A stretch of 64,000 nt of DNA, from IMG/VR virus record IMGVR_UViG_3300032323_001214, positions 62,001 through 126,000 of that record; one strand, given 5' to 3'. This document shows, piece after piece, positions 1 to 3,872 of this stretch. Both the position numbers and the translations under genes were made by a program. The notes beneath the pieces are model-generated. The model was not told where the DNA came from and made no database searches. It saw nothing but the letters and a program-made list of their open reading frames with translations. Each line of letters begins with the position of its first letter. Position 1 is the stretch's first letter.

Positions 1-1659
1 TTCTGCAATTTCTTCAGGAGTTTCAAAAAGTTTAGCTAAATCAGTACCAAACAATTTATCAGAATAAATTGCCATACCTTTCATTACACCGCTCATTACT
101 TTCATTAATTTTTCAAATGCACCGGTAACTGGACCATTCAATAGTCCAACAATTGCATCTGCACCCAATCGTGCTCTACGTTCTGCTTGTTCTTGTGCGT
201 TACGTGCTGCCTTTGCTGGGTCGGTAGTACCTTCTTTGAGTGCTTTTGCTCTAACTGCACGTTCTTCTTCAATAATTTTTTTAATTTCTTCAGGATTTTT
301 GCCACGAAATTTAGCTTCGTTTTCTAATGCTCCTAAACTGTAGGCAAACGACTTACCAACTTCTTTGTTTTGTATAACAGCTTCGCCCAAATTCTCACGT
401 GTTCGTTTAGTTGCCTGTGCCATCATTAAACTTAATTCGTAAGGTTCTTTCTTACCTTTCTTAACTGCATCAATAAATTCTAATATCTCTGGTGCACCAC
501 TAGCAAAGCCAGCACTCAATTCATTAAAATTACCTGTAGCAACCATACTTTGGAACCCGGCTAGTTCCTCACCTTTTAACATGGTTCCAGCCATATCCAT
601 TAATGCAGCAGTACGTTCACGTTCAGCTTTAATATCATTAGCTTGGGCGTTAAGGCCTTGGCTGCGTAACTTTTCTTCTTTATCCTGTAATAATGCTAAT
701 CTAGTTTGTACAGCTAAATCAGCACGTGCAACTTCTTGTGCTTTCTTTGCTTCATCAACTGATAAGCCAGTGATAGCAGATAAATCCATCAAATAGTTGG
801 TATATTCAATTGTTGTTCGCTTTAATGTGCCGTCACGTTTATCTCTATCACTGATAGCAAGACCACTTTTAATTTGCAACTTAATGTAATCTGCTTGGTT
901 CTTGTTAAGTTGCTCTTGTGTAACACCCATTGCTCGATAGTTAGCTAGCAATGTTTCATCCATTGTTGCAAGTTCAGCAAATGCTTTGACACCACCTGTT
1001 ACCGATGCGCTTAGTCCTATAATATCTGTACCAAGACCTTTAGTAATACCTGCAAACTTTTCCATTTCGCCGCTAGAATATCCAGCGGCATTTGCCATGT
1101 TTAATAACTCTTTAGTTGTTAGTGCACCGGTAGCACCAAAATCTGCTAAAATATCCGCTGAATTTAGCATTGCGGCATTTTGCTTGAGTACCATTTCGGC
1201 ACCCACACTGAACAACTTAATTAATCCACCAATAGCAGTACCCAATATACCAAAGTTTTTACCAATACTCATTGCAGCATCACCGGCTGAACTGACTGCA
1301 CTACCATATTTGGTCATGTCACCGCCGGCAGTTAGTAGTGCATTACCAAACTTTTTAAGGCTATCAACTGCCTGCGCACCAGCCATTTTATAATTTGCTT
1401 GAACTTTAGCGTATTCTTCATCAGCTTTGGCTCTAGAGTGAGTTGCAGCGGTAGCCTCTTGTTGAGACTTTAGAAAATCATCTACTAACTTTTTGCCATT
1501 TTTCGTAGTATTTGCGTTACCTTTAGTAGCGTTCATGTTCTCATTCATGGCCGCAGTCATTAAGACCATAGCCGGAACCATACCCGCTACGGTTTCACGC
1601 ATATCACGCATTGATTCGTTTAATTGTCTTAATGTTTCGGGATCTAAATTATCTGCCAT
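1..1659 (-). CDS. Tape measure-like protein, N-terminal 553 aa (continues beyond the left edge; not in ORF track)
   Basis: Manual translation from ATG at 1659 (MADNLDPETLRQLNESMRDMRETVAGM...) stays open to base 1. Ala/Gly/Lys/Glu-rich helical composition, preceded by an ACTAAATA late-type motif, adjacent to hub-assembly genes. Confidence 0.75.
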   Translation of the reverse strand, partial: MADNLDPETLRQLNESMRDMRETVAGMVPAMVLMTAAMNENMNATKGNANTTKNGKKLVDDFLKSQQEATAATHSRAKADEEYAKVQANYKMAGAQAVDSLKKFGNALLTAGGDMTKYGSAVSSAGDAAMSIGKNFGILGTAIGGLIKLFSVGAEMVLKQNAAMLNSADILADFGATGALTTKELLNMANAAGYSSGEMEKFAGITKGLGTDIIGLSASVTGGVKAFAELATMDETLLANYRAMGVTQEQLNKNQADYIKLQIKSGLAISDRDKRDGTLKRTTIEYTNYLMDLSAITGLSVDEAKKAQEVARADLAVQTRLALLQDKEEKLRSQGLNAQANDIKAERERTAALMDMAGTMLKGEELAGFQSMVATGNFNELSAGFASGAPEILEFIDAVKKGKKEPYELSLMMAQATKRTRENLGEAVIQNKEVGKSFAYSLGALENEAKFRGKNPEEIKKIIEEERAVRAKALKEGTTDPAKAARNAQEQAERRARLGADAIVGLLNGPVTGAFEKLMKVMSGVMKGMAIYSDKLFGTDLAKLFETPEEIAE

Positions 1660-1734: not shown

Positions 1735-2565
1735 ATGGCAATTCAAAACAATCCGTTAAAGCAATATTTTCGCAGACCAGCAATATATCTGAAATTACCA
1801 AGTGGTGGTAAAAACTATCCTGAGGGAGTTATTGTTATGCCCGAAACCGGAGAACTCCCAGTTTATCCTATGACTGCTATCGATGAAATTACCTCAAAGA
1901 CACCGGACGGACTTTTTAATGGTTCAGCAGTAGCCGAAATTATTAGTAGCTGTATTCCTAATATTAAGGATCCTTGGCAACTAACCAGCGTGGATTTGGA
2001 TGCTGTACTAATAGCTATACGTTCAGCCGCAAATGGTAGTGAATTGGAAATAGAAACTGTATGTCCAGCTTGTACAGAAGATGCCAAGTATGGTTTAAAT
2101 TTAGTTGGTTTGTTAAGTACTATTAAATCTGGAGATTACGATACCGAATTAGCAGTTAACGATTTGTTAATTAAATTTAGACCACTGACCTTTAAAGAAA
2201 TGAATATTGTTAGTGTAAGTCAGTTTGAAATGCAAAGACAGTTTATTCAATTAAATGCATTGGAAGACAGTGACGAGAAGAACAAAAGAAGCAAAGAAGT
2301 ATTAAAAGCAATTACCGATACAACTATGCAAGCTCTTTCAAAATGCATAGTGTATATAAAGACTCCTACGGTCTTCGTTGATGAAAACGAATTTATACTT
2401 GATTTTATACAGAACTGTGATAAGACAATGTATGAACAAATCAGAGACCATAATGCATTATTAAAGCAACAATCCGAATCAAAACCCTTAAAAGTAAAGT
2501 GTATTCACTGCAACCATGAATACGAACAACCCTTTACTATGAACATATCTGATTTTTTCGTATAA
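1735..2565 (+). CDS. T4 gp26-like baseplate hub subunit / tail assembly chaperone
   Basis: NPLKQYFRRPAIYLKLPS, YPMTAIDE, DLDAVLIAIRSA, two CxxC pairs (CPAC, CIHC), C-terminal DFF; AAGGA RBS upstream. Confidence 0.75.
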   Translation: MAIQNNPLKQYFRRPAIYLKLPSGGKNYPEGVIVMPETGELPVYPMTAIDEITSKTPDGLFNGSAVAEIISSCIPNIKDPWQLTSVDLDAVLIAIRSAANGSELEIETVCPACTEDAKYGLNLVGLLSTIKSGDYDTELAVNDLLIKFRPLTFKEMNIVSVSQFEMQRQFIQLNALEDSDEKNKRSKEVLKAITDTTMQALSKCIVYIKTPTVFVDENEFILDFIQNCDKTMYEQIRDHNALLKQQSESKPLKVKCIHCNHEYEQPFTMNISDFFV

Positions 2566-2602
2566 GGCTTCTGCATTCTAGCCCTGAGGATGTACAGAAG
2601 CT
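2553..2602 (+). promoter_or_regulatory. Candidate -1 programmed ribosomal frameshift signal
   Basis: In-frame slippery heptamer T_TTT_TTC (2553-2559), 6-7 nt spacer, stem-loop GGCTTCTG-CATTCT...AGGATG-TA-CAGAAGCT (2566-2602); the -1 frame is open from 2553 to the stop at 2789. Confidence 0.65.
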
Positions 2603-2612
2603 GATAGAAGGT

Positions 2613-2789
2613 ATGGAGAAGGAATGTGCCAGCATAAAGAAAAACGCAATAAGTTTAAGCTGGTACATGAGGGGTGGAATCTCATATGAAGATATACTAA
2701 ACATGTCCTCCGAGGAAAGAGCACAGGTAGTAGAATTGGTTAATAGTAACTTAGAAACTACTAAGAAGTCAGGACAGCCATTCTTCTAA
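2613..2789 (+). CDS. gp51-like hub assembly catalyst, 58 aa (not in ORF track; possibly the frameshifted C-terminal extension of the upstream gene)
   Basis: MEKECASIKKNAISLSWYMRGGISYEDILNMSSEERAQVVELVNSNLETTKKSGQPFF; the S-x-x-[DE]-I-x-x-M-x-x-x-ER pattern is typical of gp51-like/tail chaperone C-terminal domains. Confidence 0.7.
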   Translation: MEKECASIKKNAISLSWYMRGGISYEDILNMSSEERAQVVELVNSNLETTKKSGQPFF

Positions 2790-2834
2790 CTATATCCATA
2801 GCTGTTCATTTATCACATCGGGTGTCACTTGTAG

Positions 2835-2879
2835 AGATGGGCTTGACGCCCATCTAAGAACTCACTTCGTTCGTTCTTA
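2835..2879. repeat. Two adjacent inverted repeats (hairpins)
   Basis: AGATGGGC-ttgac-GCCCATCT (2835-2855) and TAAGAAC-tc-AC-ttc-GT-tc-GTTCTTA (2855-2879), followed on + by a T-rich tract; terminator and/or DNA hairpin. Confidence 0.6.
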
Positions 2880-2929
2880 AGTTTTATTCTTTTAAATTCT
2901 TTTTTATTCTAATCTAATAGGAGTATACT

Positions 2930-3290
2930 TGCCGATTTGAAGCCATGGTAGTGCAAATTTTGCACTACCATTGGTAAGGGTTGTTTTGCACGACCGTCAT
3001 CCATTAGTTGTCTATCCTCATACAATTAGCTATTTCTGCTATCACATGCTACCGGTTACCCTGTAAAGTTTATAGGCTGTAGTGAAGTCTGTCAATTATC
3101 TTTCAATTGACGCTTCGGTAACGCACATTCTGTATCATCAAGACAAAGTAGATACAGACTTGTTGAAGGTTCGCTTTTGTCGATTGCCTTCTCGGTATTC
3201 CATATACATAAATGTATACGTTTACTCCAGATCCATCAGCTATCTTTCAAGCATCTTCAAGGAGGTCCTGCAGCCAGGACGACAAATTTT
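2930..3290 (-). ncRNA. Candidate large structured non-coding RNA, family unassigned
   Basis: Dense stems in an intergenic gap: 3265-3280, 3201-3220, 3129-3136/3151-3158, 3091-3097/3105-3111, 3055-3060/3117-3122, 2945-2956/2960-2971, long-range 3176-3182/3280-3286. A mismatch in the 3201-3220 stem is a G-U pair only on the minus strand. Confidence 0.55.
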
Positions 3291-3299
3291 TATTTTAAT

Positions 3300-3872
3300 T
3301 TATTGTAGTGGGGAACTATCGTAGATGCTAATATCTTGTATTGACTTGGTGTCAGGTGATTCAGTTGAGTATGTTTTTAATAGATTAACATTGTGTTTGA
3401 AGAAACTGTCAAATTCGAAAATCATCCAGTCTCCGTGTTTTTTGCTAGTGTAATATATAAAATTGTCAGAAATCCATGTAAGCTTGCTTTGAACACAAAC
3501 ATACTTCCCCTTACGATTGAACTTCATAAAAAGAAGATTTACATCATTGGTATCTGCTACATCCATAAGTTGATCTAGCCAAGCGTCTATTACTTTACAA
3601 TCCCCTGTAAGTAATAGATGAAACGGGAAGTCAGCATAAAATTTGCATTCCACGTTCATTTTACTGAAACTTTGTCCTGGTACAATATCACCTTTGAATG
3701 AACGTACTTGTCCTTCATGTAATACTGTTGTTCTATGCTGATTTTTACCGCCCACATAAGCGCCAGACCCCGGAGCGCGGATGAATGATTCACCGTACTT
3801 CTCTGATAGATATTTAGCGACTTCTCGCTCAAAACCGGAGCCTTTAGCTTTTTGTGGACTTGTCATAGACAT
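3300..3872 (-). CDS. Hjc-like PD-(D/E)xK Holliday junction resolvase
   Basis: KAKGSGFEREVA, GDIV, NVECK nuclease motifs; downstream of gp46/47. The true start may be the ATG at 3866. Confidence 0.75.
   Translation of the reverse strand: MSMTSPQKAKGSGFEREVAKYLSEKYGESFIRAPGSGAYVGGKNQHRTTVLHEGQVRSFKGDIVPGQSFSKMNVECKFYADFPFHLLLTGDCKVIDAWLDQLMDVADTNDVNLLFMKFNRKGKYVCVQSKLTWISDNFIYYTSKKHGDWMIFEFDSFFKHNVNLLKTYSTESPDTKSIQDISIYDSSPLQ

What the first reader, a model, noticed from the sequence alone, without database searches (positions are those of the whole stretch)
2553..2789. Candidate -1 ribosomal frameshift fusing the gp26-like and gp51-like ORFs
Seen: the 276-aa gene ends GAT TTT TTC GTA TAA, with an in-frame U_UUU_UUC heptamer. 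6-7 nt later a two-part hairpin forms (2566-2573/2595-2602 and 2574-2579/2587-2592). The -1 frame opens exactly at the heptamer (TGA at 2550) and runs into the 58-aa ORF, predicting a ~351-aa fusion (...SDFF-RIRLLHSSPEDVQKLIEGMEKEC...). Known: lambda gpG/gpGT-type tail chaperones next to tape-measure genes use such frameshifts. Inference: this T4-like pair is the G/GT equivalent, here transcribed divergently from the tape-measure gene.
Basis: partly seen in the sequence, partly recalled or inferred. Interest (0 to 1): 0.8.

Follow-up and report, generated by a model that had tools for sequence, protein, structure and literature searches.

The report
Frameshift in jumbo-phage tail chaperone gene
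A large T4-related phage very probably makes a short and a long version of its gp26-type tail/baseplate assembly protein from one gene by letting ribosomes slip back one base at a conserved U UUU UUC site, a trick of a kind already described for phage tail chaperones but not annotated in any relative's genome record.

Summary
The 276-codon gp26-like gene (1735-2565, Pfam PF12322) ends GAT TTT TTC GTA TAA. The in-frame heptamer T_TTT_TTC lies at 2553-2559, a 14-bp bulged hairpin starts 6 nt later, and the -1 frame runs open from the heptamer to 2789.

Comparison supports a programmed -1 ribosomal frameshift:
- All 69 related loci whose gene end was readable, down to 30% protein identity and including nine cultured jumbo phages, carry an in-frame slippery heptamer there.
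- One clade has A_AAT_TTT instead.
- All have a 63-81-codon -1 extension that is conserved from the slip site onward.
- No start codon is conserved. PA5oct has none.
- The hairpin shows compensatory changes.
- Uncultured relatives encode the same fusion in one frame, without a slippery junction, always beside a second short paralogue.
- T4 does the same with gp26 (short) and gp51 (long).

Papers citing Vladimirov et al. 2022 describe this gp26/gp51 family as the tail assembly chaperones of T4-like phages, so the kind is known. This window is a new, unannotated member. No protein-level or read-level test was possible.

The parts
1735..2565 (+). gp26-like gene (zero frame, 276 aa), the short product (TAC-N equivalent)
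   Evidence: PF12322 T4_baseplate E 7.9e-17 over residues 54-275, reaching profile position 218 of 219; phrog_150 baseplate hub E 4.7e-18. AlphaFold2 model pLDDT 86.7, pTM 0.80. It is the only PF12322 gene in the 64-kb window.
2553..2559 (+). Slippery heptamer T_TTT_TTC in X_XXY_YYZ register
   Evidence: It is conserved in 43 of 49 distinct relatives. One has T_TTT_TTT and five have A_AAT_TTT. The base before it is always T although the residue varies (D, N, H, S, Y, R, A).
2563..2565 (+). Zero-frame stop TAA, 3 nt after the heptamer
   Evidence: In relatives the zero-frame stop lies 0-33 nt after the heptamer, mostly 3 nt.
2566..2602 (+). Stimulatory hairpin, 6 nt after the heptamer: stems 2566-2573/2595-2602 and 2574-2579/2587-2592, loop 2580-2586, bulge 2593-2594
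   Evidence: strand folding gives -17.5 kcal/mol, z -2.19. In 25 relatives 83.7% of cells pair against 36-55% when the partner is slid, 7 pairs change on both sides, and 0 of 500 shuffles reach the score. Hairpins of different sequence start at +6 to +8 in most other clades.
2559..2789 (+). -1 frame extension: 76 codons after the slip plus stop. Together with 1735-2559 it gives a 351-aa long product (TAC-NC equivalent)
   Evidence: Translation. The extension is 63-81 codons in all relatives and conserved from its first residue (alignment A2). tblastn of this piece, linker included, hits jumbo phages directly after their gp26 genes in the -1 frame. The profile finds 588 protein clusters. The predicted fold is helical, pLDDT 84. 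Its C-terminal half matches the gp51 C-terminal tail.
2613..2789 (+). The '58-aa ORF' as a gene caller sees it. It is probably not an independent gene
   Evidence: The ATG is not conserved. The first possible start falls anywhere from extension residue 4 to 40, and PA5oct has none.
1..1659 (-). Divergently transcribed tape-measure-like gene (first 553 codons; it runs off the window's left edge)
   Evidence: The translation is Ala/Gly-rich (helical character is my reading, not computed). It has no Pfam or PHROG hit. The nearest named protein-atlas clusters are tape-measure families at score 0.93, which is a lead only. The same position in relatives holds a 640-830-aa virion structural protein next to the T4-type portal gene.

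Best explanation
One gene yields two proteins. Most ribosomes translate the gp26-like frame and stop at TAA 2563, giving a 276-aa short form. A fraction pause with the two Phe tRNAs on UUU UUC, held by the hairpin 6 nt downstream. They slip back one base onto U UUU UU, read CGU next, and continue for 76 more codons to TAA 2787. This gives a 351-aa long form with the same body and a small helical C-terminal domain. The pair corresponds to T4 gp26 (short) and gp51 (long). It is the T4-type counterpart of the tail assembly chaperone pair TAC-N/TAC-NC (lambda gpG/gpGT): proteins that handle the tape measure and start hub and tube assembly, probably without staying in the virion.

Shown here: the sequence anatomy; conservation of the slip site, frame, extension and hairpin; natural single-frame fusions; and the paralogy of gp26 and gp51.

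Inferred: that slipping really happens, at what rate, that it is ribosomal, and the chaperone function.
For: - Slip site. All 69 informative loci, from 100% down to 30% protein identity, have an in-frame X_XXY_YYZ heptamer at the homologous xFF position. They include Atu_ph07, Phosso, Serratia BF, PA5oct, 121Q, Xoo-sp13, Vibrio 2.275.O, CBB and GAP32. A divergent clade uses A_AAT_TTT one codon upstream and keeps the same -1 frame.
- Extension. It is always 63-81 codons and is conserved from the slip site onward (FFRxRLL, WYMRGG, ER motifs). The -1 frame is closed 1-18 codons upstream of the heptamer.
- No independent start. PA5oct has no ATG, GTG or TTG in its 75-codon extension, and elsewhere the first start wanders between residues 4 and 40.
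- Hairpin. It has covariation support, and a stable fold begins at +6 to +8 in most clades with different sequences.
- Natural fusions. At least 19 protein clusters of 319-351 aa carry a gp26-like N-terminal part and the extension in one frame. All five fusions scanned hit PF12322. In the five long genes whose junction was read correctly the junction is non-slippery, for example TTC AGA. One such protein aligns collinearly across the window's shift (residues 2-255 to 1765-2559 in frame 0, residues 250-331 to 2541-2786 in frame -1).
- Two-gene alternative. In all 6 fusion loci examined the long gene sits just after a short PF12322 paralogue. T4 gp26 and gp51 both match PF12322 (E 9e-64 and 4e-52), and gp51 has a C-terminal tail that matches the extension profile (84.6%, E 6.9e-6). 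Genomes with the frameshift show a single PF12322 locus.
- Literature. Citing papers report that Vladimirov et al. [quoted passage not shown]
- Virion proteomics. CBB and PA5oct proteomes list the tape-measure-like neighbour but not the gp26-like protein. This is weak evidence.
Against: - There is no protein, reporter or read-level evidence.
- The hairpin is weak or absent by simple folding in some clades: L054-L060, Serratia BF, CBB and GAP32, at -4 to -9 kcal/mol.
- U_UUU_UUC is not the most efficient bacterial slip site known (my own knowledge).
- The chaperone role rests on analogy and on a paper I could not read.
- Neither the gp26-like model nor the extension model resembles any solved structure, chaperone or otherwise.
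- The gene is not in the canonical place between the tail tube and tape measure genes on the same strand.
Confidence: 0.82

Rival explanations
1. Two separate genes. The 58-aa ORF would be translated on its own from ATG 2613, or by reinitiation after the stop at 2563, and the heptamer would be a by-product of a conserved Phe-Phe.
For: Gene callers and every GenBank or RefSeq record examined annotate a separate small ORF. T4 gp26 also ends ...FFELL, so Phe-Phe is ancestral.
Against: The start codon is not conserved, and PA5oct has none in 75 codons. The 18 codons upstream of ATG 2613 are conserved as protein. The wobble T before the heptamer and the TTT TTC spelling are invariant where the extension is out of frame. 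They vary in T4, in most short paralogues and in the in-frame fusions, although two short paralogues (L081, L083) keep a T-rich in-frame heptamer. GAAGG lies only 1-2 nt before ATG 2613, which is too close for a normal ribosome binding site.
Confidence: 0.04
2. Transcriptional slippage. RNA polymerase would add one U in the T6 run, giving some mRNAs in which the two frames are fused.
For: The site is a homopolymer: T6 here, T7 in Xoo-sp13 and T8 in Melnitz. The title of Vladimirov et al. [quoted passage not shown]
Against: The A_AAT_TTT clade has only five T's. Runs this short are poor substrates for polymerase slippage (my own knowledge). The run is always in X_XXY_YYZ register, and a hairpin with covariation lies at the spacing typical of ribosomal frameshifting. 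One citing paper states that the other mechanism is separate short and long genes.
Confidence: 0.06
3. Artefact or decay. A homopolymer sequencing error, or a recent frameshift mutation, would have split a gene that is really one 351-codon ORF.
For: Single-frame versions of the protein exist in other lineages. The reads of this contig could not be inspected.
Against: The same frame break is present in 69 independent assemblies and in cultured phage genomes from many laboratories, including a clade with a different heptamer. The zero-frame stop directly after the site is also conserved. In-frame versions have a different, non-slippery junction and always come with a second short gene.
Confidence: 0.01

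Closest known systems
Tail assembly chaperones of T4-like phages: T4 gp26/gp51 family, Pfam PF12322 (Vladimirov, Gautam & Davidson, Virology 2022, known to me only through citing papers PMC10885494 and PMC12846349)
   Same: It is the same protein family (PF12322). It has the same short-plus-long logic. The C-terminal tail of the long form is related to that of gp51. A poly-T slip signal at the end of the short gene is reported for some T4-like phages, and separate short and long genes for others.
   Different: T4 itself has no slip site: gp26 ends TTC TTT GAG TTA CTA TAA and is followed by gene 25. Here one gene does both jobs. The extension is longer than gp51's tail (76-78 aa against about 48). 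The members found here are jumbo phages of 250-490 kb and uncultured relatives whose records carry no frameshift annotation. I could not check whether the 2022 paper lists them.
Lambda gpG/gpGT and the conserved tail-chaperone frameshift of long-tailed phages (Xu, Hendrix & Duda, Mol Cell 2004)
   Same: A -1 slip near the 3' end of a small assembly gene gives a major short and a minor long protein with a common N-terminus. The gene is associated with the tape measure gene. The signal is conserved although the sequences diverge.
   Different: There is no detectable sequence or fold relationship. The short form is much larger (276 aa against about 140 for gpG, from my own knowledge). The gene is divergent from the tape-measure-like gene rather than just upstream of it on the same strand. 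The heptamer is U_UUU_UUC, whereas lambda's is G_GGA_AAG (my own knowledge).
Small 'gp51 / baseplate hub assembly catalyst' ORFs annotated after gp26 in non-Tevenvirinae T4-like phages such as Sinorhizobium phage phiM9 and Methylophilales phage Melnitz
   Same: The arrangement is identical. The gp26 gene ends in T_TTT_TTG or T_TTT_TTT, 3 or 0 nt before its stop, and a 63-68-codon -1 extension with the M-x-x-x-ER motif follows.
   Different: Those records treat the small ORF as an independent gene. Those genomes are 140-150 kb, and their extensions are shorter and highly diverged from the window's.

Membership tests
Programmed -1 ribosomal frameshift site (tandem slippage) | X_XXY_YYZ heptamer in the zero frame | tested here: met
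   T_TTT_TTC at 2553-2559. It is present in all 69 informative relatives, with A_AAT_TTT, T_TTT_TTT or T_TTT_TTG as variants.
Programmed -1 ribosomal frameshift site (tandem slippage) | Stimulatory RNA structure 5-9 nt downstream | tested here: met
   A 14-bp bulged hairpin starts 6 nt after the heptamer, -17.5 kcal/mol, z -2.19. Covariation: 7 pairs changed on both sides, 83.7% of cells paired against 36-55% for slid controls. Some distant clades fold weakly.
Programmed -1 ribosomal frameshift site (tandem slippage) | The -1 ORF is open from the site, conserved as protein through the part that has no start codon, and the frame relation is kept in relatives | tested here: met
   No relative has a stop in the linker, and PA5oct has no start codon in its extension.
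Programmed -1 ribosomal frameshift site (tandem slippage) | Orthologues that encode the trans-frame product in a single frame | tested here: met
   19 clusters of 319-351 aa. Collinear alignment across the shift.
Programmed -1 ribosomal frameshift site (tandem slippage) | The trans-frame protein is observed and its yield depends on the heptamer | not testable with these tools
   This needs mass spectrometry or a reporter assay.
T4-type tail assembly chaperone, gp26/gp51 family (PF12322) | Sequence membership of PF12322 | tested here: met
   E 7.9e-17, 62.1 bits against a cut-off of 24.5. T4 gp26 and gp51 both match the same model.
T4-type tail assembly chaperone, gp26/gp51 family (PF12322) | A long form whose C-terminal tail is related to that of gp51 | tested here: inconclusive
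   Profile against profile gives 84.6% probability, E 6.9e-6, over 33 columns. Single-sequence comparisons were not significant. The full-length profiles aligned only in the N-terminal part.
T4-type tail assembly chaperone, gp26/gp51 family (PF12322) | Linked to the tape measure and hub genes | tested here: inconclusive
   The divergent neighbour is tape-measure-like by composition, position and an atlas lead only. It has no Pfam or PHROG hit and no similarity to T4 gp29.
Lambda gpG/gpGT-type tail assembly chaperone | Sequence or fold relationship to known chaperone families | tested here: not met
   No Pfam tail-chaperone family matched. The PDB profile search found nothing relevant. Foldseek of a confident model found no match below E 0.3.
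Lambda gpG/gpGT-type tail assembly chaperone | Gene located between the tail tube and tape measure genes, on the same strand | tested here: not met
   The gene is divergent from the tape-measure-like ORF, and recombination genes lie downstream.
Lambda gpG/gpGT-type tail assembly chaperone | Binds the tape measure protein, the long form recruits tube protein, and both are absent from virions | not testable with these tools
   The only weak hint is that the gp26-like proteins are missing from the CBB and PA5oct virion proteome lists while the neighbour is present.

The most novel reading that the evidence does not exclude
The frameshift may not have been described for the jumbo-phage branch of the family (Rak2/121Q-like, PA5oct-like, Atu_ph07-like, Xanthomonas and Vibrio jumbo phages, and hundreds of uncultured clusters). 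If so, the family would show repeated switching between two ways of making a short and a long chaperone. One way is a single gene with a -1 slip, using at least two different heptamers and non-homologous hairpins. The other is duplicated short and long genes, tandem in uncultured lineages and divergent in T4. In the tree the short paralogues nest beside frameshifting genes.
Probability: 0.35. Interest if true: 0.55.

Novelty: new member of a known kind. Interest (0 to 1): 0.45.

Why it matters
- Annotation. Every record of these jumbo phages that I inspected lists either a spurious small 'hypothetical protein' or nothing after the baseplate hub gene, and none has a joined CDS. A 351-aa product is therefore missing from their proteomes, including phages considered for therapy or biocontrol (PA5oct, 121Q-like phages, Atu_ph07).
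- Biology. The data give an independent line of support for reading T4 gp26 and gp51, two long-puzzling hub 'catalysts', as the short and long forms of one chaperone.
- Evolution. The family is a natural experiment. The same requirement is met by recoding in some lineages and by gene duplication in others, so the need for both forms, and for their ratio, could be tested in cultured phages.

Tried and rejected
- A nucleotide search of the phage collection found nothing, so all relatives were reached through protein.
- The extension has no Pfam family and only phrog_18291, of unknown function.
- Neither the extension nor the gp26-like body has a relative among solved structures by sequence or by fold. 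The extension also has none in BFVD.
- Rfam has no family in 2300-3300.
- Single-sequence comparison of the extension with T4 gp51 gave nothing (3-5% probability). Only the profile of gp51 C-terminal tails gave a signal. Full-length long-form against gp51 profiles aligned only N-terminally.
- Fetching many in-frame-fusion loci failed. The alignment was too diverse, and two single queries found no relative in IMG/VR. Only six such loci were examined, by exact look-up.
- An apparent one-piece tblastn match in PA5oct-like phages was checked and is not a fusion.
Neither the length of the T run in the reads nor RNA-level slippage could be checked.
- Vladimirov et al. 2022 is not held in the library, so its content is known only from two citing papers.
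- The terminator scan found none after the extension.
- The tree is unrooted, so I do not claim which arrangement is ancestral.

Full report
WHAT IS THERE

The window comes from a 249.6-kb uncultured viral contig (IMGVR_UViG_3300032323_001214) with 36% G+C. The ORF 1735-2565 encodes a 276-aa protein of Pfam family PF12322 (T4_baseplate, E 7.9e-17) and PHROG 150 (baseplate hub). The homology runs to the last residues of both the protein and the profile.

The gene ends GAT TTT TTC GTA TAA. The heptamer T_TTT_TTC (2553-2559) is in X_XXY_YYZ register. TGA 2550-2552 closes the -1 frame just before it. From the heptamer the -1 frame is open to TAA 2787-2789.

For 2553-2612 the energy is -17.5 kcal/mol with z = -2.19. 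The hairpin begins 6 nt after the heptamer.

Upstream, on the other strand, an ORF starts at 1659 and runs off the window. Its product is Ala/Gly-rich (helical character is my reading, not computed). It has no Pfam or PHROG hit. Its nearest named clusters in the protein atlas are tape-measure families, which is a lead only.

Downstream, on the minus strand, lie a PDDEXK endonuclease gene, a gp46/Rad50-like gene and a gp47/SbcD-like gene.

IS IT MORE THAN CHANCE?

The heptamer alone is not. In-frame X_XXY_YYZ motifs occur at 0.55% of codons in long open frames of this window, and this gene has three. Position and conservation are what count.

I fetched 69 related loci from viral contigs and 11 loci from cultured phages.

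- Slip site. In every locus whose gene end could be read (69, plus phiM9 and Melnitz) an in-frame slippery heptamer sits at the homologous xFF position. Among 49 distinct sequences, 43 have T_TTT_TTC, one has T_TTT_TTT, and five from a divergent clade have A_AAT_TTT one codon upstream in the same register.
- Wobble base. The base before the T-type heptamer is always T although the residue there varies (D, N, H, S, Y, R, A).
- Controls. Phe-Phe elsewhere in the window is mostly TTC TTT, and the slippery spelling occurs in 2 of 35 cases. T4 gp26, which has no extension, writes its terminal Phe-Phe as TTC TTT.
- Zero-frame stop. It follows within 0-33 nt, usually 3 nt.
- Extension length. The -1 extension is always 63-81 codons. 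Four shorter ones are cut by contig ends.
- Extension sequence. It is conserved from its first residues: FFRxRLL, then WYMRGG, an ER motif and a TTKKSxxPFF-type end. tblastn with the extension, linker included, hits jumbo phages immediately after their gp26 genes in the -1 frame.

INDEPENDENT INITIATION IS UNLIKELY

The first ATG, GTG or TTG in the extension falls anywhere between residues 4 and 40. Pseudomonas phage PA5oct has none in 75 codons, and its record annotates nothing there. In the window, ATG 2613 is preceded by GAAGG at a spacing of only 1-2 nt.

THE HAIRPIN

In a gap-free alignment of 25 relatives with 50-100% protein identity, the window's structure is paired in 83.7% of cells. 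When the 3' partner is slid by 1-3 columns the figure is 36-55%. Seven of 14 pairs change on both sides, and 0 of 500 column shuffles reach the covariation score. The usual caveats apply: the structure was derived from one member, and the sequences are related.

Folding each of 49 sequences separately gives a hairpin starting 6-8 nt after the heptamer in most clades. The mean energy is -14.5 kcal/mol and the mean z is -2.2. The arms are non-homologous and at different positions in the distant clades, for example GGAUCUUAUCU/AGAUGAGGUCC and GGUCAC/GUGACC. A few clades fold weakly: L054-L060, Serratia BF, CBB and GAP32.

NATURAL FUSIONS AND THE TWO-GENE ALTERNATIVE

A profile of the extension finds 588 protein clusters (E up to 0.001) in 1.8 billion representatives. 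Most are short ORF calls. At least 19 of the best 150 are proteins of 319-351 aa with the extension at the C-terminus of a gp26-like body in one frame. All five of these fusions that I scanned match PF12322. In the five long genes whose junction the script read correctly it is xFRxK/R-L/I, written with non-slippery codons such as TTC AGA; for L082 the script picked an N-terminal site, and that long form's real junction reads HFYQRLI.

One such protein aligns collinearly across the window's shift. Residues 2-255 map to 1765-2559 in frame 0 and residues 250-331 map to 2541-2786 in frame -1.

In all six fusion loci I could fetch, the long gene is immediately preceded by a second, short PF12322 gene of 276-297 aa without an extension. 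Where the contig reaches far enough, the pair lies next to a divergent 640-830-aa protein and the T4-type portal gene. Genomes that have the frameshift show only one PF12322 locus.

T4 fits the same pattern. gp26 (208 aa) and gp51 (249 aa) both match PF12322 end to end (E 9e-64 and 4e-52), and gp51 has about 48 extra C-terminal residues. A profile of that tail from seven Straboviridae matches the C-terminal half of the extension profile (hhalign 84.6%, E 6.9e-6). Single sequences do not reach significance.

So the same need, a short form and a long form, is met by recoding in some lineages and by two genes in others.

In a maximum-likelihood tree, four of the short paralogues sit beside frameshifting genes (support 100/97), while most long paralogues form their own clade. 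The tree is unrooted, so I draw no direction from it.

MECHANISM

Tandem -1 slippage of the two tRNA-Phe on U_UUU_UUC, stimulated by the hairpin, is the reading that fits all features.

Transcriptional slippage is a weaker rival. The run is T6 here and only T5 in the A_AAT_TTT clade. The register is always that of a ribosomal slip site. A structure sits at the canonical spacing.

A sequencing error or pseudogene is excluded in practice by 69 independent assemblies that share the break and the adjacent stop.

WHAT IS KNOWN

None of the genome papers on this jumbo-phage clade that the library holds mentions a frameshift, and no record I inspected has a joined CDS.

[quoted passage not shown] The phage Adele paper (PMC12846349) cites the same work for poly-T slip signals in TAC-N genes of T4-like phages. 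I could not read the 2022 paper itself.

Some recent records already name gp26 or gp51 homologues 'tape measure protein assembly chaperone' or 'baseplate hub assembly chaperone'. Smaller T4-like phages (phiM9, Melnitz) show the same arrangement, with the small ORF annotated as gp51.

The kind is therefore known. The window is a new, unannotated member, and the jumbo-phage breadth, the alternative heptamer, the hairpin covariation and the tandem-paralogue lineages may or may not be new.

FUNCTION

The chaperone role is inferred. It rests on the G/GT-like logic, the link to a tape-measure-like gene, the classical genetics of T4 gp26 and gp51 as non-structural hub assembly factors (my own knowledge, and PMC9024508), and the absence of the gp26-like protein from the CBB and PA5oct virion proteome lists.

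There is no sequence or fold similarity to lambda-type chaperones. Confident AlphaFold2 models of the body (pLDDT 86.7) and of the helical extension (pLDDT 84) match nothing in the PDB. The extension model also matches nothing in BFVD; the body model was not searched there.

LIMITS

The key prior paper was not read. Only six fusion loci were examined.

Noticed in passing
L074 3331-3555 (Pseudomonas phage PA5oct, NC_071039.1): The 75-codon -1 extension after the baseplate hub gene contains no ATG, GTG or TTG and is not annotated at all in the RefSeq record. It can only be expressed by recoding.
   Followed up: yes
L061, L063, L065, L067, L071 (heptamer at about 3819-3825 of each locus): A divergent uncultured clade uses A_AAT_TTT one codon upstream instead of T_TTT_TTC. 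It keeps the -1 frame and a 79-codon extension, and has its own GGUCAC/GUGACC hairpin.
   Followed up: yes
L080 3135-4996; L081 411-2389; L082 3172-5008; L083 1959-3790; L084 196-2114; L086 3105-5032: Uncultured relatives carry tandem PF12322 genes: a short one, then a long one with the extension in frame. The short paralogue in L080 lacks the CxxC zinc-ribbon cysteines.
   Followed up: partly
L081 about 1274-1295: The short paralogue still ends with an in-frame T_TTT_TTC 12 nt before its stop, but the -1 frame closes after three codons. It may be a relic of a former slip site.
   Followed up: no
L086 1-709 and the NCBI contig of P0039: The T4-type portal genes next to these loci contain an intein (PF14890), with a faint HNH hit in L086.
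   Followed up: no
L096 2142-2333 (Sinorhizobium phage phiM9); L097 2160-2366 (Methylophilales phage Melnitz): Small ORFs annotated as gp51 or 'baseplate hub assembly' are -1 frame extensions of gp26. They follow T_TTT_TTG or T_TTT_TTT heptamers that lie 3 or 0 nt before the stop.
   Followed up: partly
L094 (Cronobacter phage GAP161, NC_019398.1 62143-62916): In this Pseudotevenvirus the gene order is gp54, gp51, gp26 on one strand, unlike the divergent 26/51 pair of T4.
   Followed up: no
window 2835-2855, 2855-2879 and about 2943-2975: Three inverted repeats lie in the 500-nt gap after the extension. The first is a G+C-rich 8-bp stem. The second is an A+T-rich stem followed by a T-rich run. 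The third is a 12-bp near-perfect palindrome. They may be terminators between convergent units, but the terminator scan reported none.
   Followed up: no
window, all open frames of 150 codons or more: Phe-Phe is mostly written TTC TTT (18 of 35). The slippery spelling T-TTT-TTC occurs only twice, once at the finding. This suggests avoidance of slippery Phe-Phe elsewhere.
   Followed up: partly
window 1-64000: No tRNA genes were found in this 64-kb stretch of a jumbo-phage contig.
   Followed up: no
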